63,990 nt of DNA, taken from NCBI RefSeq assembly GCF_001194135.2, contig NC_068991.1:75422625-75486614 (forward strand). Direction: 5' to 3'. Both the position numbers and the translations under genes were made by a program. Position 1 is the first letter of the stretch, and each line of letters opens with the position of its first letter. The DNA comes from Octopus bimaculoides. Taxonomy: Eukaryota. The notes beneath the pieces were generated by a model. That model made no database searches. It was given only the letters and a program-made list of their open reading frames with translations, and was not told where the DNA came from. This document shows, in pieces, positions 3,012 through 61,882 of the stretch.

Positions 3012-3905
3012 TTAAAGTAGTATCTCTTTGTAGACACAATTTTCAGTAATCAAAGTTTTTTTCCATTTCTCACAGCCAAAATTTATTACATTAGCTTTAT
3101 TTCGAACTCTGGATAATGCAACATACAGCTGACCATGTGAGAAGAAATGTGTCGGAAGATATATTCCAATTTGTTCAAAAAGCTGTCCCTGTGTCTTGTT
3201 GCACGTCAAGGCAAAAGCTGGCTTCACAGGAAATGATTTGCATGTAAATGTAAATGCAAATTCCATTTCTTGAGATACATGTGGTATTTTTGGGAATAAC
3301 AGAGTTGATCCTGCATAAGGACCAGAAGCAACCTCAGTCTCAACGACATGATCATGGAAACTGACAATGATGTACTGTGTGCCATTCCAATGTCCATTAG
3401 TAGCATCTAAATATCTCAGGAGCATTATGCATCGTTTGTCCTACAGTTTGAGAATGTGTGGTGGAAACCCTGATGGTGTAAGTTTATTGATGAACTCAAT
3501 TGGGTACAGAGTTTCATTATCAACTGTATCTGAGCTTCTGTATATTTTTAGCTCACCAGGGATCCTGGTCAACAGGAAATCATTCACAAATTGTGCTGCT
3601 TCATTTGTTGGAGTAGCAATGGTTCTATTTGCAAGCCACAAAGGGTTTGTGGAAGTTATTTTTGAGGTCAGCATATACAAAATCACAAAGATCTGAAAGA
3701 GAACCACTTTCAAAGCAAGGATCGTTGGGTAATTCAACAGAAATGTTACCATTTCCTACATCAAGAGGGTAATTAGAAAACTCTCTTTCATCAAAATGAC
3801 CTTCTGTAAGAAGTCTTAGATTGGTTGTCAACTCCACTACCTCCACATGATCGCAAAGAAAAGATCTCTTTAATGTTGCCCGTGGGCATATGGCGCGAGC
3901 TACTA
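3012..3905 (-). pseudogene. Helitron RepHel C-terminal PIF1-like helicase fragment, with frameshifts and a stop
   Basis: Frames give LKRSFLCDHVEVVELTTNLR, TPTNEAAQFVND, YPIEFINKLTPSGFPPHILKL, NGTQYII and FPVKPAFALTCNKTQGQ...FSHGQLYVALSRV (helicase motifs IV-VI). Confidence 0.92.
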
Positions 3906-9483: not shown

Positions 9484-9854
9484 TAGATAGATATATGCAT
9501 CTATCTATCTTTACACGCCAGTATATATGCATCAATGTGTGATCAAACCTAAGTTTGTGCTCGTAGGCGTATATGTGCCTATCTTGTGCATAAACATATG
9601 TATATATAAACAAATATTTCTATATGCAATTGCAGGCAATATATGCATGTGTTGCCGTACACATACATACATCTATCTATCTATTTATATATACATATAT
9701 AAGAATAAAAATGTATAAATGAATATATTATATAAATATATATATGAGTATACATGTTTATATATCAACATATGAATCTATACATATATATATGTACACA
9801 GACATACATGCATGCATATATATATATATATATATATGCACNNNNNNNNNNACA

Positions 9855-13099: not shown

Positions 13100-13318
13100 T
13101 ATTTATTTATTGCCCACAAGGGGCTAAACATAGAGGGGACAAACAAGGAAAAACAAAGGGATTAAGTCGATTACATCGACCCCAGACTGGTGCTTATTTA
13201 ATCGACCCTCAAAAGGCAAAGTCGACCTCGGAGGAATTTGAATTCAGAACGTAGCGGCAGACGAAATACCGCGAAGCATTTCACCCGGCGTGCTAACGTT
13301 TCTGACAACTCGCTGTCT
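13100..13318 (-). mobile_element. Full SINE family A copy with a 17-bp target-site duplication
   Basis: aaggataaactaatatt at 13083-13099 and 13319-13335. Confidence 0.92.
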
Positions 13319-13351: not shown

Positions 13352-13565
13352 GGGTTACACACAGAGGGGACAAACAAGGACAGACAAACGGATTAAGTCG
13401 ATTATATCGACACCAGTGCGTAACTGGTACTTATTTGATCGACTCCGAAAGGATGAAAGGCAAAGTCGACCTCGGCGGAATGTGAACTCAGAAGGTAACG
13501 GCAGACGAAATATTACTAAGTATTTCGTCCGGCGTGCTAAAGATTTCTGCCAGCTCGCTGCCTTC
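13352..13565 (-). mobile_element. SINE family A copy
   Basis: Same head, central motif and gggacaaacaaggacagac tail as the neighbouring copy. Confidence 0.88.
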
Positions 13566-29445: not shown

Positions 29446-31889
29446 AAATTCATTGCTTTATTGAATAGTCTGTATATGACTCAATGGTATGATAAAAAAA
29501 TGTATATTATAATAATGTATATGAATATAATAACAGCTCATAACGTGCCGATACTTAAGAAATAATGTCGAATAGGCAGAAAATTAATCATATTTTTAGA
29601 ACGTGAGATAGAATGTCAAGCAGCATTTAGTCCGGTCGTCTGTGCTCTGAGTTCAAATCCCATTGAGATCATCTTCACCCTTCATTCTATCTGGATCGAT
29701 AATTAGATTATTAGTCTAGTGCTTGGATCGATTTCTTTTTCTTTCATCCTGTCTTACGATCTTTATATCTAGGAGAATTTGACATGGTGAAACTTAGAAA
29801 AGACTAGACTGCGGTAGATTTTAAATTCCAAGACCTTCCAGATATACGGAAGGCACCTCTAGACTCCGATAAGAGTTGAGGAACCCAAAGTGAGGAAAGA
29901 TAAATAACTTCCAGCCGTTAACCTCGCACCTTTATGTAAACGAGTTACGATTGGTTCGGTCATGTTAGTATTTTCAAAAATAACTCTAGACTCCTTCAAC
30001 AGATCGGGAAGAAGAAATAAGTGAATATAGATATATGTATAAACAGCGAAGCTCGTCGTTTCGTTCCTCAATCCAAGATGCTGAGAAAAGAACTGTTGGT
30101 CAAACCGCAACACTTAAACGTGTAACGATATATCTCAGCATACACAGTTGCTTATAACAGAGAGTGCGGTAGTACTTAGTAACTTACGTTTAAATGTTGC
30201 TCTTATATCTTTAGTTTCTAAGAAACCGATCTTGTTCAAGTAAATCCAATGTAAATTTATGCATAAAATGGACTACAAGATGTATCTCTTGGGTTTTGAC
30301 AATAGTTGAAATGATTTTTGTTTTTAAAATAATTAGCATACAAAAACAATAAGAGATTAATCAACTATAATATGAACTTGAAATGGCAATAAATGTTTCG
30401 ACCCCAGCTGGGAATCGGAGTCTTTTTGCGCTTCCGCTTCATTCTTTTAGTTTTACTGAATTTATGTATTGTTTTGCATAACATATATCTTATTTCGGCG
30501 TCCGACGAAGCATCATGGCTTGCGAGAATTATTCATGTGACAAGGCGTAACTTGGGTTCATTTTATCGAACAAAATATTTTCGATGCTAATCATTACCTT
30601 TTCTTTTCCTTTTTTTTTAAAAATTTTTGATCTTGTTTGCTACAACCACTTGAATACCCAGCGCGTTGATGACAACAGAATGGTGAAATTGTAAATTTAA
30701 AATGTCTCTCTATCTGAAATGCAACGGTTAATACAATACAAATTATATTCAGTTCAAATACAAATAGTCTTTGAAAGAATTGGAAGGTTATTATGTCTGC
30801 CACTATTTTCAGTTCTTTTTTTAAGTAAATGTTACATTGGGCCGTTTTTAAATGAACGACTCATTAAAATTATCGTTTAATATTTTTTGACCAAAAAGTA
30901 TTTTAGAAATATTAATTTCAAATTCGGTATCTCAGTACATATATTGAACAATATTTGTATTTATTTACATGACTTTTCAAGAAGCAATCTTCTTAAACAC
31001 GATCTTATTTTCATCATGGTGAATTTGGCCACTTTGAAAGAGATTTGGCTGCTGCTATTTCTAGCAGGATGATAACTTTAGAGAAAGTCTTCACATTTTA
31101 AAATCTGTACGAGTATTCGTACTATTTTCGGCGGAGGATTATGTCAAAAAACATTATTTTACCATAATTTTCTCCACAATATTACTTAACATGTCTGAAA
31201 TTGCAATCTATGAGTGAAACAGTAAAAATATGCAAGACTTTTCTCAAGTTCCAAATGTGAATTTGTTAACTACAACTCAAAGATAGAGCCTGGTATCTTT
31301 GTTGGAAAGCGGCTCCCTCCTCAGTATAATATTTATAATAATTAAAAAATAGAACACACACACACACACACACACACATCCTATAAACATATATAATGTA
31401 AATCACAGAAATATGCTCGATACTTCATTTGCAATTATGTATAATTACGTATAATTATCAAGACTACACTTTCGAATTTCAGTTTGTATCTTTGACATAT
31501 TTTAAATATAGTTATAAAATTATTTTTCTGGTGCTGTAATCCTTACCACACAGCCCATCAGTGTAGTTTTCTAGAATATTCCGTTTAGAATTCATCCACT
31601 GTTCTATTTAACATACTTACAACGACCTCAAATGTGGGGAATAGTAAGTCGATAAAAGGTTTGGTGTACCGACTCGGAGAGATGAAAGGTAAACTTGATT
31701 TCGGCAGGATTTTAATTCAAAACATGGTACCAGCACAAATAAACCAACACCCCGTCGGTTAAAGCCACGAGGGTGTTGTATCGCACGTTCAACGTACGAT
31801 ATAACGGGATAATAACAAGATCCTCGCAAATCGTCTGCACAAGACACAGGTAATAACCCTCGACAATGCGCAACTCTCGGCTTTACATA

Positions 31890-31919
31890 GCTCCAAGGAC
31901 TCCCTTCTTTATTCGGCAC
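31890..31919 (-). terminator. Putative polyadenylation signal (AATAAA, 31908-31913) in the 3' copy of a 30-bp direct repeat
   Basis: Minus strand gtgccgAATAAAgaagggagtccttggagc, about 160 nt downstream of the ORF stop. Confidence 0.45.
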
Positions 31920-32069
31920 TACGGCCGTAACATAGAGGGGGACACTACAGGGATAGACAACACAAAACGTGGGGTATATAAAATGAATGATGAAATACGA
32001 GATGAAATATTTCACAATGAAAAGATGTAATGGCTTATGAGCCCCGCAGAGCTCATTATACATTAATTA

Positions 32070-33108
32070 TCAGTCTTTTTTGTCTGTTATGTATTCCATG
32101 AGGTTCTCTAGTTCCATTACATTGGATAAACTTTCATATTGTATATATATCCCGGTAGGTCTAATTCTGGTTCCGAATAACTCCATCAGTCTTTCCTTTC
32201 TCTCTTCCTCCAATAAAACCGCTCCTTCGTCGGGTTCGAACATCTCATCATTCAGTTTGACTCGTATTAGATTTTTCATTTTTGCTAGTTTTTTTTTCTA
32301 TCTCTACATCCTTATTGTATCCTAACACTGTTCTTCTATTTCGTCCAGCAATTTGTCTTGTTTGTGCTACATATTCCTCTCTCCTCCTCACTCTCTCCCT
32401 CTACTCATCATACTTCTTCTCTCTCGCTCTTTCCTCTTCAGTTTTCTTCCTCCTGCTTGTTGTTGGCTCTGGTTCCTGCGTTCGAATCTCCACACTCTTT
32501 TTCCATAGTAACTTGTTTCTTTGTCTCCGCGTTTCTTTTCTTTGGACTTTTTGGCGGAGACGCAACTCTCGTTCTTTTCCAATCTGTCGCAGATTCCTCC
32601 TCCTTTTCCTTCCCCGCTTCTACCACCATTGCTTCTACTACGTCCATCTTCCCCTGTTTCTGGGGACATCTTGCATGCATGTGTCCCCTTTCTCTGCAGT
32701 TATAGCATATTGGCGGTCTCCCCTCCACCACGACTTTCAGTCGGGTCGCATCGGGGAGCACCAACTCCTCAGCCATCTTATGTAGACCTGGCAGGGTTAT
32801 GCGTATAAACGCTTCGAGACTATAACTCCGGCTGATCTCCTTCGACCTCTCCGCCTCTATTATATCCACCTCCTCCTCGAAGTTGCAGATGTTGGCCGCC
32901 ACCAGCCATGCTTCATCAATCTCTGGGGACACCCTCGTTGATCTCGAAGGCCTCGTGGCGTGCCCCCTGCCTCTCCCTCGTTAACGAAGCGCACCTCCAC
33001 CGTGCCGCATTTCCCTCCTCTCGAGCAAAATGTTGAAACTTCTCCAATCTCTTGCAAACACTTCTCAACTTCTTCGACCTCCGCCTCCTCAATCTTCTTC
33101 GCTTCCAT
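32070..33108 (-). pseudogene. Decayed CCHC zinc-knuckle nucleic-acid-binding ORF (LINE ORF1p- or Gag-like) with a charged, coiled-coil-like C-terminus
   Basis: MEAKKIEEAEVEEVEKCLQE...GTVEVRFVNEGEA, frameshift, then SPEIDEAWL...VVVEGRPPI-CYNCRERGHMHARC (CX2CX4HX4C); later stops and frameshifts; ends MEYITDKKD*. Confidence 0.8.
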
Positions 33109-33236
33109 GTTAAATGTTCGGTATACCACTCTTTCTCCCTCTGCCCCCCTGCAACACGTCGGCTAGTGGTGTCAAGCGGAGGCAATCTCCCTAGTCCATT
33201 ATACCCCTTAAAATCTTTTCCCTCCGTCTCAATTTG

Positions 33237-33735
33237 CCCCAGCTGCAAAATGTTGGGCGCCGGGCCCCAGCTGCAAAATGTTGGGCGCCGGGCCCCAGCT
33301 GCAAAATGTTGGGCGCCGGGCCCCAGCTGCAAAANNNNNNNNNNNNNNNNNNNNNNNNNNNNNNNNNNNNNNNNNNNNNNNNNNNNNNNNNNNNNNNNNN
33401 NNNNNNNNNNNNNNNNNNNNNNNNNNNNNNNNNNNNNNNNNNNNNNNNNNNNNNNNNNNNNNNNNNNNNNNNNNNNNNNNNNNNNNNNNNNNNNNNNNNN
33501 NNNNNNNNNNNNNNNNNNNNNNNNNNNNNNNNNNNNNNNNNNNNNNNNNNNNNNNNNNNNNNNNNNNNNNNNNNNNNNNNNNNNNNNNNNNNNNNNNNNN
33601 NNNNNNNNNNNNNNNNNNNNNNNNNNNNNNNNNNNNNNNTTGGGCGCCGGGCCCCAGCTGCAAAATGTTGGGCGCCGGGCCCCAGCTGCAAAATGTTGGG
33701 CGCCGGGCCCCAGCTGCAAAATGTTGGGCGCCGGG
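33237..33735. repeat. 28-bp GC-rich minisatellite ccccagctgcaaaatgttgggcgccggg
   Basis: Six identical full units plus partial units flanking the N-gap 33335-33639. Confidence 0.97.
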
Positions 33736-33898
33736 CAACCGCTCGCCACCGCTGCACAGCTGCCGGCTCCCATTACCAACAGTGGGCAGAAAAAACAAAC
33801 TCAACAACAGTTCAATCAACAAATCCAACGACAATATCAACAATTTCAAAATCAATTTTCACAACTCACCACTCTGAAGACTAACACACGACTCCCAG

Positions 33899-33990
33899 GC
33901 TCCAATGACTGATTTCTTTACTCGGTACCTATACTCTCTGCGCATGTCCATTTATATTGTGGAACCGTCCACTAGGAACCAACCAATAGG
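33899..33990 (-). promoter_or_regulatory. Putative Pol II promoter of the insertion: CCAAT box, TATAAAT, TCAGT initiator
   Basis: CCAAT 33983-33987 (plus strand); TATAAAT 33956-33950; TCAGT 33912-33908; TATA-to-Inr spacing about 45 nt, longer than usual. Confidence 0.4.
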
Positions 33991-34119
33991 GGTGTTCTAT
34001 TTCCACGCAACAGAGGGTTTCTGTTTAAACGATCCCTGGAATAGCCTGCACGTGAAATTAACGTGCAAGTGACTGAGCATTCCACACGTACCCGTTACAT
34101 AGTGTGTGTGTAATTCGAC

Positions 34120-34900
34120 TGCGTCTGCAAAGAAGTGTGCCGTCTGGCATTATCGTAATGAAAGGCAATGTCCTTACCATTAATAAGTACTGGTCGGTTC
34201 TGGTGGATCGCTGCGCTTAATTTGTCTAGCTGGTTACAATACACTTCCGAGTTAATGGTCCTGTCTGTGAGAAAAAGCTTGTGAAAGACATCCTTACAAT
34301 CTCATCAAAATAAAAGCATAATCTTCTTCGCGTAAAGCCCTGCTTTGGAGGTTGTTAGTGATGATTCACCGCACTTCCTCCATCACCGTTAGCGCGTCAC
34401 ATTGCTGTAGACGGTCCATTTTTCGCTCCCTATCACTGTTCTATTAAAAAAGGATTCTTTTCTTCACGTTTCTGCTACGAATCGCAGATGGAAATCATTT
34501 GGATGAGGATAGCCTCATTCAAATGAGGTGGGGCCCTGCTGACGTAAGCAAATTGATGTAGATGGTTTTCAACAATCGATTTGAATAATGGGAGAATATC
34601 TACGATCATCCAGGTTGGAGTTGGTGTTGACTAGCTCTTTAATTTTGTCGCTGGTAATCTCAATCAACCAATGAGTGGTGCATCTTGAACGGAAAAATTT
34701 CTCGATCAAAATCTGGAGAATCACTTCCGACACAGAGGTTCCATAACAGTCTCCTTTTCGTACAGAACACATATCTTCCTGCAGATTTCCGGCGGTTTCT
34801 GTCCGTTTTTTAAATAGAAGAAAATGTGAGGTATCGATAAAGTTCGTTTCGGCTCTCCATTTTCAGAGCTATCTCAAGCACATAAATTTCATCAAAATAC
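34120..34900 (-). mobile_element. Decayed mariner transposase (N-terminal HTH to near the HHDNARPH motif)
   Basis: Fragments DKIKELVNTN, W-PHLNEA-LIQ-IS-CDS, TVIGSEKWTVYSNV, PKQGFTRRRLC, RTINSEVYCNQLDKLSAAIHQNRPVL in shifting frames. Confidence 0.8.
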
Positions 34901-35875: not shown

Positions 35876-36301
35876 ATATTTATTTCTACTCTAGGCACAT
35901 GGCCTAAATTTTTTTGGGAAGGGACCAGTCGATCAGATCGACCACAGTACGCAACTGGTACTTAATTTTAATCGATCACGAAAGGATAAAAGCCAAATTC
36001 GACCTCAGCGAAATTTGAACTCAGAGCGTAACGACAGACGAAATACCGCTAAGCATTCCGCCCGGCGTGCTAACGTTTCTTATTTCTTTATTGCCCAGAA
36101 GGGGCTAAACATAGAGGGGACAAACAAAGAGATTAAGTCGATTATATCGACGCCAGTGCGTAACTAGTACCTATTTAATCGACCCCGAAAGGATGAAAGG
36201 TAATGTCAACCTCGGCGGAATTTGAACTCAGAACGTAACGATAGACGAAACACCGCTAAGCATTTCGCCCGGCGTGCTAACGTTTCTGTCAGCTCGCCGC
36301 C
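35876..36301 (-). mobile_element. SINE family A dimer
   Basis: Junction aagaaataAGAAacgttagc near 36078; the two copies have different tails. Confidence 0.9.
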
Positions 36302-54502: not shown

Positions 54503-54830
54503 GGAGGCGCAATGGTGGTCATAGGATAGCGGTTTCGATTCCCAGACCGGGTGTTGTGTGTGTTTATTGAGCGAAAACACTCAAAGCTCCACGAGGCTTC
54601 GATAGGGGCTGGTAGCGAACCATGCTGCAATTTTCTCTCACTTTTTCTTCCTGTTTCTGTTGCACCTGTATTTCAAAGGGCCAGCCTTTTCACGCTGAAT
54701 CTCCCAGAGAACTACATTAAGAGTACATGGGTCTGTGGAGTGTTCAGCCACTTGCACGTTAATTTCACGAGCAGGCTGTTCCGCTGATCGGATCAACTGG
54801 AACCCATGTCGTCGTAACCGACGAAGTGCC
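54503..54830 (+). mobile_element. SINE family C, tail variant 2
   Basis: ggaggcgcaatgg...ggtttcgattcccagaccggg...cacttgcacgttaatttcacgagcaggctgttcc...gtaaccgacgaagtgcc. Confidence 0.9.
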
Positions 54831-59697: not shown

Positions 59698-60411
59698 CTT
59701 CTTCTTCTTCTTCTTCTTCTTCTTCTTCTTCTTCTTCTTCTTCTTCTTCTTCTTCTTCTTCTTCTTCTTCTTCTTCTTCTTCNNNNNNNNNNNNNNNNNN
59801 NNNNNNNNNNNNNNNNNNNNNNNNNNNNNNNNNNNNNNNNNNNNNNNNNNNNNNNNNNNNNNNNNNNNNNNNNNNNNNNNNNNNNNNNNNNNNNNNNNNN
59901 NNNNNNNNNNNNNNNNNNNNNNNNNNNNNNNNNNNNNNNNNNNNNNNNNNNNNNNNNNNNNNNNNNNNNNNNNNNNNNNNNNNNNNNNNNNNNNNNNNNN
60001 NNNNNNNNNNNNNNNNNNNNNNNNNNNNNNNNNNNNNNNNNNNNNNNNNNNNNNNNNNNNNNNNNNNNNNNNNNNNNNNNNNNNNNNNNNNNNNNNNNNN
60101 NNNNNNNNNNNNNNNNNNNNNNNNNNNNNNNNNNNNNNNNNNNNNNNNNNNNNNNNNNNNNNNNNNNNNNNNNNNNNNNNNNNNNNNNNNNNNNNNNNNN
60201 NNNNNNNNNNNNNNNNNNCACCATCATGATCACCACCACCAACACCACCACCATAATCATCGATCATCACCATCACCACCAACAACAACAACAACACCAC
60301 CACCACCATCATCATCGACCACCACCACCAACACCAACAACAACAACAACACCACCACCATCATCATCGACCACCACCACCACCACCACCACCACCATCA
60401 TTCACTTGGCC
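59617..60411. repeat. (GTT)n to (CTT)n, gap, then (CAC/CAT/CAA)n trinucleotide block
   Basis: Seen directly; N-gap 59783-60218. Confidence 0.95.
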
Positions 60412-61517: not shown

Positions 61518-61882
61518 TGACCCAGTAGTTAGGGAGGCAGAATCGCAGTCGTGGGTCGCAGTTTCGATTCCCAGACCGGGCGTTGTGAGTGTTTATTGAG
61601 CAAAAACACCTAAAGCTCCACGAAGCTCCGGCAGGAGTGGGTGGCGAACCCTGCTTTACTATTTCATCACAACTTTCTCTCTTTCTTCCTGTTTCTGTTG
61701 TATATGTATTTCAAAGTGCCAGCCTTGTCATACTGTGTCACACTGAACTTCTCCGAGAACTACGTTAAGGGTACACGTGTCTGCGGAGTGCTCAGCTACT
61801 TGCACGTTAATTTCACCAGCAGGCTGTTCCGTTGATCGGATCAACTGGAACCCTTGTCGTCGTAACCGATGGAGTGCCACAA
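61518..61882 (+). mobile_element. SINE family C, tail variant 2
   Basis: cccagtagttaggg...gtttcgattcccagaccgggcg...gtaaccgatggagtgccacaa. Confidence 0.9.

What the first reader, a model, noticed from the sequence alone, without database searches (positions are those of the whole stretch)
31774..34012. Element with integrase-type ends and a 5-bp TSD but no LTR pair, carrying only a zinc-knuckle ORF
Seen: TGTTG...CAACA termini, GAGGG on both flanks, and a gap-free SINE family C tail (one GAGGG) once the insertion is removed, which fixes the boundaries. On the minus strand the order is CCAAT, TATAAAT, TCAGT, a 28-bp array, a decayed ORF with CX2CX4HX4C, then AATAAA. There is no RT, integrase or transposase, and the two ends share only 30 bp. 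Established: TG..CA ends with a 4-6 bp TSD mark DDE integrases (LTR elements, Ginger). ORF1-only LINE derivatives (HAL1 type) insert by target-primed reverse transcription and lack such ends. Inference: the GRPPICYNC..GH...CP context and an upstream RRM-like segment look more like L1/Tx1 ORF1p than Gag. This could be an undescribed non-autonomous class: a self-contained transcription unit for an RNA-binding protein, mobilised in trans by an integrase.
Basis: partly seen in the sequence, partly recalled or inferred. Interest (0 to 1): 0.82.

Follow-up and report, generated by a model that had tools for sequence, protein, structure and literature searches.

The report
Nested repeats, not a new transposon
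The 2.2-kb insertion is real, but it is most likely two ordinary mobile elements stacked: an octopus LINE derivative that keeps only its first gene (ORF1), sitting inside a 230-bp piece with LTR-type ends, rather than a new class of transposon moved by an integrase.

Summary
TGTTG...CAACA ends, a GAGGG duplication and a gap-free empty site fix the insertion at 31774-34012. No reverse transcriptase, integrase or LTR pair is present. The assembly gap lies inside a perfect 28-bp array.

The interpretation mostly does not hold. The minus-strand ORF is a decayed but complete copy of a ~400-aa Octopus protein family: two RRM-like domains, a CCHC knuckle, a charged linker and a C-terminal domain. This is a Type I LINE ORF1p, not Gag. 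In one related contig the homolog is followed directly by an L1-type endonuclease ORF2.

The ORF unit's last 56 nt match the 3' tail of octopus SINEs and stop at AATAAAGAA (31905). That is 131 nt short of the CAACA end. Related ORF1-only units in O. bimaculoides, O. vulgaris and O. sinensis share the ORF and this tail but not the outer ends. The "30 bp shared by the ends" flanks the inner unit like a LINE target duplication, and a relative has a 20-nt one.

The parts
31769..31773 (.). Left copy of the 5-bp target-site duplication GAGGG of the outer element
   Evidence: The empty-site reconstruction aligns gap-free to two other repeat copies.
34013..34017 (.). Right copy of the 5-bp target-site duplication GAGGG
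33899..34012 (-). 5' part of the outer 'shell' (about 114 nt). It starts TGTTG and carries an inverted CCAAT box, TATAAAT (33956-33950) and AGTAAAGAAATC. It ends with the 5' copy of the 30-nt repeat (33928-33899). Probable U3/R part of a solo LTR.
   Evidence: Its first ~100 nt have no significant similarity to the 5' regions of related ORF1 units.
31774..31889 (-). 3' part of the outer shell (116 nt), ending CAACA. Probable U5 part of a solo LTR.
   Evidence: Similarity to L009 stops at AATAAAGA. The stretch after the tail (31904-31774, which contains this part) shows no significant similarity to post-tail sequence in L009, L001 or L010.
31902..33898 (-). Inner LINE-type unit, ORF1-only: TTG-rich 5'UTR, ORF1, about 160-nt 3'UTR, and tail ...GTGCCGAATAAAGAA(GGG). 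The 5' limit is uncertain by about 14 nt and could be 33912.
   Evidence: Protein family. 3'UTR about 75% identical to an O. bimaculoides unit. Tail shared with SINEs, about 13 sd above shuffles.
33899..33910 (-). AGTCATTGGAGC: 5' copy of the 12-nt core repeat, a candidate target-site duplication of the inner unit.
   Evidence: It matches 11 of 12 with 31890-31901, which begins 3 nt after the tail.
31890..31901 (-). AGTCCTTGGAGC: 3' copy of the 12-nt core repeat, directly after the tail plus GGG.
   Evidence: L001 has the analogous arrangement, a 20-nt repeat directly after AATAAAGAGAAA.
31905..31960 (-). LINE/SINE-type 3' tail: TTGTCTATCCCTGTAGTGTCCCCCTCTATGTTACGGCCGTAGTGCCGAATAAAGAA.
   Evidence: Aligns to SINE tails in the window (50367, 36121) and in L010. 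Score 43 against a shuffle mean of 13 (sd 2.3), 0 of 2000 shuffles reaching it. The alignment ends at AATAAAGAA.
33236..33736 (-). 28-bp tandem array (unit CCGGCGCCCAACATTTTGCAGCTGGGGC on the minus strand) around the assembly gap 33335-33639. It is a local amplification of a coding segment (..PAPNILQLG..) in the N-terminal part of ORF1.
   Evidence: The L009 homolog has no array at this place.
33771..33773 (-). Probable ORF1 start codon (MGAGSCAAVASG...). It corresponds to the family's N-terminal x(S/T)(Y/F)AxxAA motif.
32960..33129 (-). First RRM-like domain (VVYRT..KCGTVEVRFVNEGEA). It is followed by a deletion of about 20 aa and two frameshifts near 32930-32970.
   Evidence: Tandem RRM fold in the family model.
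32666..32707 (-). CCHC zinc knuckle CYNCRERGHMHARC, preceded by the family motif VVVEGRPP.
   Evidence: Pfam zf-CCHC E=9e-4, just under the cut-off. C, C and H are invariant or nearly invariant in the family alignment, and the last C is nearly invariant in A3.
32070..32279 (-). C-terminal domain of ORF1p (MKNLIRVKLNDEMF...ENLMEYITDKKD), in a third frame after stop codons in the charged linker.
   Evidence: Aligns with the C-termini of P0004, P0016, P0021 and P0017.

Best explanation
The 2239-bp insertion is a stack of ordinary repeats, not one element.

(1) A ~230-bp piece with TGTTG...CAACA ends integrated into an interspersed repeat and made the 5-bp duplication GAGGG. It is most likely an LTR retrotransposon later reduced to a solo LTR. 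Its TATA box and AGTAAA would be the LTR's own signals.

(2) An ORF1-only LINE derivative then inserted about 114 nt into that piece by target-primed reverse transcription. The reverse transcriptase and endonuclease would come in trans from an autonomous L1/Tx1-type LINE that recognises the unit's 3' tail. The octopus SINEs carry the same tail. The unit consists of a 5'UTR, a Type I ORF1p gene (two RRM-like domains, a CCHC knuckle and a C-terminal domain), a ~160-nt 3'UTR and a tail ending AATAAAGAA. It left a ~12-nt duplication, AGTC[A/C]TTGGAGC.

(3) Later decay: a 28-bp coding segment expanded into a tandem array, and the ORF picked up a deletion, frameshifts and stops.

Shown: the outer boundaries and duplication; the ORF1p family and its LINE context; the shared SINE/LINE tail and where homology to relatives ends; the inner repeat.

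Inferred: that the outer piece is a solo LTR; that the inner unit moved by target-primed reverse transcription in trans; the order of events.
For: Outer boundaries: gap-free empty site in two other repeat copies.

The ORF is a LINE ORF1p:
- HMMER finds about 100 hits at E<=0.001, most of them Octopus relatives with the same architecture.
- AlphaFold model of family member P0021: pLDDT is mostly above 80 for residues 30-260. Its best PDB matches are tandem-RRM proteins such as Pub1, Sxl and nucleolin. Against viral structures it matches RRM proteins and no capsid.
- In L008 a homolog is followed within about 10 nt by an ORF with endonuclease motifs. That ORF aligns to human L1 EN 7.6 sd above shuffles, with 0 of 1000 shuffles reaching the score.
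- Type I ORF1p (RRM + CCHC) is characteristic of Tx1-type LINEs in non-mammalian animals (PMC5203782). L1-Tx1 families are annotated in O. vulgaris (PMC13282606).

Inner 3' terminus:
- The 3'UTR is about 75% identical to the L009 unit from the stop codon to AATAAAGA and no further.
- The last 56 nt align to SINE tails about 13 sd above shuffles and end at AATAAAGAA.
- Sequence after the tail shows no similarity to post-tail sequence in L009, L001 or L010.

Relatives are ORF1-only and lack the shell: L001, three units in L009, L010 and L013. No endonuclease or RT is adjacent to them. No shell copy in 151 kb.

LINE-type insertion marks:
- A 12-nt repeat begins 3 nt after the tail in the window.
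- A 20-nt repeat begins directly after AATAAAGAGAAA in L001, and that unit is 5'-truncated relative to ours.
- L009 unit 1 and the L010 unit are 5'-truncated.
- A SINE in L010 has a 14-bp duplication.

HAL1 is the precedent for ORF1-only LINE derivatives (PMC5753468).
Against: - The solo-LTR identity of the shell rests only on TG..CA ends, a 5-bp duplication, its size and promoter-like motifs. No related LTR or autonomous element was seen.
- The 5' limit of the inner unit is not fixed by homologs. A soft alignment to the L013 5'UTR begins at TCAGTCATTG, inside the supposed duplication. A multiple alignment of the 5'UTRs was uninformative.
- The target next to the 5' repeat copy is 13 of 15 identical to the LINE tail. 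That is too good for chance and a plain target duplication does not explain it. The 30-nt repeat may be a tail/head junction copied twice from a tandem array (note 4).
- The inner unit has no poly(A), and GGG sits between the tail and the repeat.
Pfam and PDB sequence searches did not recognise the decayed L008 ORF2.
- Only six related units from four loci could be examined.
Confidence: 0.6

Rival explanations
1. The whole 2239 bp is one non-autonomous mobile unit: a promoter, an ORF1p gene and a poly(A) signal between TG..CA ends, cut and pasted or integrated in trans by a DDE integrase. The 30-nt repeat would act as an R-like terminal redundancy.
For: - Perfect 5-nt inverted termini of the canonical TGTNR type with a 5-bp duplication.
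- The 30-nt repeat sits just after TATA/Inr and at the poly(A) signal, as R does in an LTR.
- L001 has a short repeat in a comparable position.
- The shell was not seen without the ORF unit, though only 151 kb was searched.
Against: - Six related ORF1-only units lack these ends.
- The unit ends in a SINE/LINE tail 131 nt inside the CAACA end.
- The sequences between the repeats and the ends are not duplicated, so no LTR can be regenerated from an R-to-R transcript.
- No partner element with these ends is known.
- A solo LTR explains TG..CA plus a 5-bp duplication without anything new.
Confidence: 0.1
2. A single LINE-type insertion of the whole 2239 bp. The outer ~100 nt and ~130 nt would be upstream 5'UTR or 5' transduction and 3' read-through carried from the source locus. 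GAGGG would be a short LINE duplication, and TGTTG/CAACA a coincidence.
For: - The inner unit is clearly LINE-type.
- LINE duplications vary in length.
- The family forms head-to-tail arrays whose transcripts could carry neighbouring sequence.
- L013 has a longer upstream region of unknown status.
Against: - It needs both 5' and 3' transduction.
- It needs a 5-nt perfect inverted terminal match of TG..CA type by chance (about 1 in 1000).
- TATA and Inr would lie inside the transcript.
- The SINEs seen, and the ORF1-only units whose 3' ends could be read (L009 unit 1, L001, L010), all end at the tail.
- The inner 12-nt repeat would be left unexplained.
Confidence: 0.08
3. A variant of the best explanation. 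The insertion is nested, but the 230-bp shell is not a solo LTR. It would be another small element with a 5-bp duplication, such as a MITE-like non-autonomous DNA transposon or an unknown short repeat.
For: - The only LTR criteria met are the ends, the duplication and the size.
- No pol-bearing relative was seen.
Against: - The terminal inverted repeat is only 5 nt, and MITEs normally have longer ones.
- TGTTG..CAACA with a 5-bp duplication and an internal TATA followed by a poly(A)-signal variant is the classic LTR layout (established knowledge of Ty3/Gypsy, BEL/Pao and Copia integration).
Confidence: 0.15

Closest known systems
HAL1 ('half-L1'), the mammalian ORF1-only non-autonomous L1 derivatives (Smit 1999; Bao & Jurka 2010; summarised in PMC5753468)
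   Same: It encodes only ORF1p. It keeps a LINE-type 3' end. It has no endonuclease or RT, so it must be mobilised in trans. It persists as several diverged subfamilies: units 25-50% identical at protein level are all ORF1-only.
   Different: The ORF1p is Type I (RRMs + CCHC knuckle + extra C-terminal domain), not the mammalian Type II (coiled coil, RRM, CTD). The host is a cephalopod. The tail is AATAAAGAA(ATAA) shared with SINEs, not poly(A). Units are found head-to-tail (L009).
L1/Tx1-clade LINEs with Type I ORF1p (Khazina & Weichenrieder 2009 classification, as summarised in PMC5203782)
   Same: RRM + CCHC ORF1p. A homolog is directly followed by an L1-type APE ORF2 (L008). L1-Tx1 families are annotated in O. 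vulgaris.
   Different: The window unit and five of its relatives have no ORF2. Clade assignment by RT phylogeny was not possible.
Solo LTR of a Ty3/Gypsy, BEL/Pao or Copia retrotransposon
   Same: For the outer shell only: TG..CA (TGTTG..CAACA) ends, a 5-bp duplication, about 230 bp, and TATA followed by a poly(A)-signal variant.
   Different: No paired LTR, PBS/PPT or gag-pol relative was found. The identification is by form only.
SINE-LINE partnership through a shared 3' tail (e.g. PMC5786205)
   Same: The last ~56 nt of the ORF1-only unit and of the octopus SINEs are homologous and end at the same AATAAAGAA motif.
   Different: Here the partner seen is itself non-autonomous. The autonomous LINE with this tail was not identified.
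Ginger DNA transposons
   Same: TGTNR-type termini and a short duplication.
   Different: Ginger elements have long TIRs and encode an integrase-like transposase (own knowledge). Here the TIR is only 5 nt and no transposase is present.

Membership tests
LTR retrotransposon / solo LTR (outer shell) | Termini 5'-TG...CA-3' | tested here: met
   TGTTG at 31774-31778 and CAACA at 34008-34012.
LTR retrotransposon / solo LTR (outer shell) | 4-6-bp target-site duplication | tested here: met
   GAGGG on both sides. The empty site is confirmed in two paralogous repeat copies.
LTR retrotransposon / solo LTR (outer shell) | The same sequence occurs elsewhere as paired direct repeats around gag-pol with PBS and PPT | not testable with these tools
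   No Octopus genome can be searched by DNA. No copy in the 151 kb held. A metagenome scan gave only chance 19-mers.
Intact LTR element (whole 2239 bp) | A pair of long terminal repeats | tested here: not met
   No direct repeat at the ends except one internal 30-nt repeat.
LINE, autonomous (L1/Tx1) | ORF2 with AP endonuclease and reverse transcriptase | tested here: not met
   No such ORF in the element. tblastn with APE and RT probes found nothing in the window.
LINE ORF1p, Type I | RRM domain(s) followed by a CCHC zinc knuckle | tested here: met
   Knuckle at 32707-32666. The family model shows tandem RRM folds. The window copy aligns over the whole family architecture.
LINE ORF1p, Type I | The gene lies directly upstream of a LINE ORF2 in autonomous members | tested here: met
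   L008 has the ORF1 homolog at 850-2031 and the endonuclease-like ORF from about 2040. This is one locus, decayed, from an unidentified species. Pfam did not recognise the ORF2.
HAL1-like ORF1-only non-autonomous LINE derivative | ORF1 only, followed by the LINE 3'UTR and tail | tested here: met
   The stop at 32070 is followed by about 160 nt and then the tail at 31905. L009, L010 and L001 have the same layout.
HAL1-like ORF1-only non-autonomous LINE derivative | Insertion by target-primed reverse transcription: variable-length duplication abutting the 3' tail, and 5' truncation among copies | tested here: inconclusive
   A 12-nt repeat (11 of 12) begins 3 nt after the tail. L001 has a 20-nt repeat. 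Relatives are 5'-truncated. However, the repeat can also be read as a duplicated tail/head junction (note 4).
HAL1-like ORF1-only non-autonomous LINE derivative | An autonomous partner LINE with the same 3' tail | not testable with these tools
   Only SINEs with the same tail were seen. The L008 contig ends inside ORF2.
Retroviral/LTR-element Gag | Capsid-like helical domains upstream of the nucleocapsid knuckle | tested here: not met
   Foldseek against PDB and against viral structures returns RRM proteins and no capsid. The PDB sequence search matches only the knuckle, at E>0.3.
Ginger / DDE-integrase DNA transposon (non-autonomous) | Terminal inverted repeats of tens of bp shared with an autonomous element | tested here: not met
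   Only 5 nt are inverted at the termini.

The most novel reading that the evidence does not exclude
The composite is not a one-off. An LTR-type shell that captured an ORF1-only LINE unit might propagate as a family with TGTTG..CAACA ends and 5-bp duplications. The evidence here makes this unlikely but cannot exclude it, because no Octopus genome could be searched for the outer ends.
Probability: 0.08. Interest if true: 0.8.

Novelty: new member of a known kind. Interest (0 to 1): 0.27.

Why it matters
As proposed, a new transposon class, it would have mattered a good deal, but the evidence points to a routine nested insertion.

What remains of modest interest:
- Octopus genomes carry an apparently old and diversified lineage of ORF1-only LINE derivatives, a cephalopod counterpart of mammalian HAL1.
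- Their Type I ORF1p has two RRM-like domains, a knuckle and a conserved C-terminal domain.
- Their 3' tail is the same as that of the abundant octopus SINEs, which points to the still unidentified autonomous LINE that drives those SINEs.
- Their remnants are annotated in RefSeq as "uncharacterized protein" genes, which is worth knowing for annotation.
- The tail/head repeat and the head-to-tail arrays hint at tail-directed insertion or concatemer formation in this LINE/SINE system.

Tried and rejected
- Word-indexed protein searches with the stitched ORF and with two family alignments returned almost nothing. Only the exhaustive HMMER search found the family.
- Exact look-ups of the window's own ORFs, and of P0004 and P0016, found no contigs.
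- Pfam sees only a sub-threshold knuckle in the window ORF. It sees nothing in the L008 ORF2. The PDB sequence search was equally silent.
- Rfam found nothing relevant.
- A second match to the 5' terminus at 3622-3640 turned out to lie in a Helitron-type helicase remnant and is chance.
- A metagenome scan for the 5' terminus gave two chance 19-mers.
- I tested whether the ends could be diverged LTRs, or whether U3/U5-like segments recur next to the internal repeats, as a provirus would require. They do not.
- An apparent similarity between the 3' shell and the L009 inter-unit spacer (TTACCTGT..TGTTATTAT) is within shuffle expectation.
- A TG..CA plus duplication scan around the L001 unit gave only a low-information TATAT candidate in a TA microsatellite.
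- No duplication could be found for the L010 unit. The L013 unit's 3' end is lost in an assembly gap.
- A multiple alignment of the 5'UTRs was too diverged to fix the unit's 5' end.

Full report

Yes. TGTTG is at 31774-31778 and CAACA at 34008-34012, with GAGGG on both sides at 31769-31773 and 34013-34017. I joined the two flanks with a single GAGGG. The result aligns without a gap across the junction to two other copies of the same interspersed repeat in the window: 54734-54823 (79%) and 61759-61876 (75%). The 2239 bp is therefore an insertion with exactly these limits and a 5-bp target duplication.

There is no second copy of the element in the window. There is no LTR pair and no inverted repeat beyond the 5 terminal bases.

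- an inverted CCAAT box (about 33987-33983);
- TATAAAT (33956-33950);
- TCAGT (33912-33908);
- the 28-bp array (33736-33236);
- a broken ORF with CX2CX4HX4C (32707-32666);
- AATAAA (31913-31908).

The "30 bp shared by the ends" is a direct repeat: GTACCGAGTAAAGAAATCAGTCATTGGAGC (33928-33899) against GTGCCGAATAAAGAAGGGAGTCCTTGGAGC (31919-31890). It matches at 24 of 30 positions and scores about 5 sd above shuffles.

**2. The assembly gap**

The gap at 33335-33639 lies inside the array. On each side there are 3.5 perfect copies of the same 28-bp unit on the same strand, so the two sides belong together. The nominal 305 N does not keep the repeat in phase, so the copy number is unknown. The array sits in the N-terminal coding part of the ORF. 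Because 28 is not a multiple of three, the frame across it cannot be known. All conserved domains lie downstream of the gap, so the classification below does not depend on it.

**3. What the ORF is**

Pfam sees only a sub-threshold zinc knuckle, and the word-indexed protein search found nothing. An exhaustive HMMER search with the ORF stitched across its frameshifts found about 100 hits at E<=0.001. After setting aside unrelated multi-knuckle proteins, most are Octopus relatives, annotated mostly as uncharacterised O. bimaculoides, O. sinensis and O. vulgaris proteins.

Complete family members are about 400 aa and share one architecture:
- an N-terminal segment;
- RGxKYGTVEVRF;
- LLPTYxGRR...VPPEI..WLVAA;
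- VVVEGRxPxCxxCGxxGHxxxxCP;
- a K/E-rich linker with SPPKSPKK;
- a conserved C-terminal domain.

The window copy contains all of these in order, from an ATG at 33773 to a stop at 32070. It is damaged by the array, a deletion of about 20 aa, two frameshifts near 32950, and stops in the linker.

An AlphaFold model of a complete member, built from a 32-sequence family alignment, is confident over residues 30-260. Foldseek matches it to tandem-RRM proteins such as Pub1, Sxl and nucleolin. In the viral library it matches RRM proteins and no capsid. So this is not Gag.

It fits Type I LINE ORF1p (RRM plus CCHC), which is typical of Tx1-type LINEs in non-mammalian animals (PMC5203782). L1-Tx1 families are annotated in O. 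vulgaris (PMC13282606).

There is also direct context. In a 2.8-kb Logan contig (L008), a decayed homolog that includes the C-terminal domain is followed within about 10 nt by an ORF with the ordered endonuclease motifs (..N.CGL, D...IEN, TIYAS, GVFN, SDHKLV, YWKLNTSFL). That ORF aligns to the human L1 endonuclease 7.6 sd above shuffles.

**4. Where the ORF unit ends**

I fetched loci for four relatives:
- L001, O. vulgaris;
- L009 and L013, O. bimaculoides;
- L010, O. sinensis.

All carry ORF1 followed by a short 3'UTR and no ORF2. L009 holds three units head to tail. No endonuclease or RT lies next to any of them.

The window unit's 3'UTR is about 75% identical to that of L009 unit 1 from the stop codon to AATAAAGA, and the similarity stops there. 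The same ~56-nt block (TGTC..TGTCCCCTCTATGTT..GTG..AATAAAGAA) forms the 3' tail of the octopus SINEs, both in the window (13124, 36105, 50366) and in L010. The window 3'UTR aligns to these tails about 13 sd above shuffles, and the alignment ends at AATAAAGAA. SINE copies end a few bases later (..AAATAA), and one has a 14-bp duplication.

So the ORF unit is a LINE-type retroposon whose 3' terminus is at 31905. That is 131 nt inside the CAACA end. The sequence beyond it has no counterpart after the tails of L009, L001 or L010.

On the 5' side, similarity to the L013 5'UTR covers positions about 101-240 of the element. The first 100 nt have none. This limit is softer, because the 5'UTRs are very diverged.

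**5. The internal repeat**

The 3' copy of the repeat begins with the genuine tail (GTGCCGAATAAAGAA), followed by GGG and then AGTCCTTGGAGC. The 5' copy ends with AGTCATTGGAGC, immediately before the unit's 5'UTR.

The simplest reading is a 12-nt target duplication (11 of 12) made when the unit inserted. L001 shows the same arrangement. There, a 20-nt repeat (one mismatch and one 1-nt gap) begins directly after AATAAAGAGAAA and also abuts a start that is 5'-truncated relative to ours. Other relatives are 5'-truncated too.

Two things do not fit a plain duplication:
- The target next to the 5' copy (GTACCGAGTAAAGAAATC) is 13 of 15 identical to the tail.
- The soft L013 alignment starts at TCAGTCATTG, inside the supposed duplication.

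The repeat may therefore be a tail/head junction present twice. That would arise if slightly more than one unit were copied from a head-to-tail array. Such arrays exist (L009), and SINEs also sit head to tail (window 36105 region). It could also arise by template jumping. I could not resolve this (note 4). Either way the repeat belongs to the LINE-type unit and not to an LTR-like replication cycle. The segments between the repeats and the ends are not duplicated, so an R-to-R transcript could not regenerate the ends.

**6. Best explanation, rivals and comparison with known elements**

The best explanation, at about 0.6, is a stack of insertions:
1. an interspersed repeat;
2. into it, an element with TGTTG..CAACA ends and a 5-bp duplication, now ~230 bp and most likely a solo LTR whose TATA and AGTAAA are its own signals;
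3. into that, an ORF1-only L1/Tx1-type derivative, placed by target-primed reverse transcription using enzymes supplied in trans;
4. then decay.

The solo-LTR label rests on form only.

Rivals:
- A single LINE event carrying flanks from its source, with TG..CA by chance (about 0.08).
- A nested insertion into a non-LTR small element (about 0.15).

The closest known analogue of the inner unit is mammalian HAL1 (PMC5753468). The differences are a Type I ORF1p, a non-poly(A) tail shared with SINEs, and tandem arrangement.

**7. Verdict**

The ORF1p inference is supported. The proposed new class is not supported. What is left is a new (cephalopod) member of a known kind, with a small unexplained detail in the tail/head repeat. 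The decisive step is a copy census of the shell and of the unit in Octopus assemblies, which these tools could not do.

Noticed in passing
window 3012-3660 (minus strand): Remnant of a Helitron/Pif1-type helicase C-terminus (..FPPHILKL..NGTQYII..QGQ..). Pfam gives a weak UvrD_C_2 hit. A 3-mismatch match to the element's 5' terminus here is chance.
   Followed up: partly
window 34095-34244 (minus strand): A short ORF with ..FHYDNARRHTS.. just right of the insertion looks like a mariner-type transposase fragment. This is by eye only; Pfam was silent.
   Followed up: partly
window 13124-13141(-), 13355-13372(-), 36105-36122(-), 50366-50383(+): SINE 3' tails (TGTCCCCTCTATGTTTAGCCCCTTGTGGGCAATAAAGAAATAA) homologous to the 3'UTR of the ORF1-only units. 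The copy at 36105 is followed directly by the 5'-truncated head of another SINE, which suggests tail-directed insertion.
   Followed up: partly
L009 9929-14588 (O. bimaculoides CM046605.1): Three ORF1-only units of two subfamilies lie head to tail, separated by assembly gaps. Between units 1 and 2 the tail AATAAAGA is followed after 17 nt by the next unit's TTG-rich 5'UTR and ATG.
   Followed up: partly
L008 850-2788 (Logan SRR11869391 contig): A decayed ORF1 homolog is immediately followed by an L1-type endonuclease ORF2. This is the only autonomous-type context seen for this protein family. The species is not identified and the contig ends inside ORF2.
   Followed up: partly
L001, L009, L010, L013 gene models: Decayed ORF1 remnants are annotated as protein-coding genes: XP_052823997 and XP_014783152 (uncharacterized LOC..., O. 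bimaculoides), XP_036360159 (O. sinensis) and A0AA36BNH3 (O. vulgaris). P0013, P0030 and P0038 look like chimeric models that join such remnants to neighbouring sequence.
   Followed up: no
L002-L007 (Logan SRR11869384-94): Contigs of about 1.7 kb that match closely in length and in gene position, carrying a distant family member (P0070), recur in six sequencing runs. All but the shortest have the gene at the same coordinates. This may be an expressed copy or a single-copy locus.
   Followed up: no
L001 9640-9830: A ~190-bp palindromic (MITE-like) sequence lies just upstream of the O. vulgaris ORF1-only unit, and TA microsatellites lie on both sides of that unit.
   Followed up: no
window, ten N runs (9842-9851 ... 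59783-60218): The window has ten assembly gaps. Most long 'ORFs' listed mechanically are runs of X across them.
   Followed up: no
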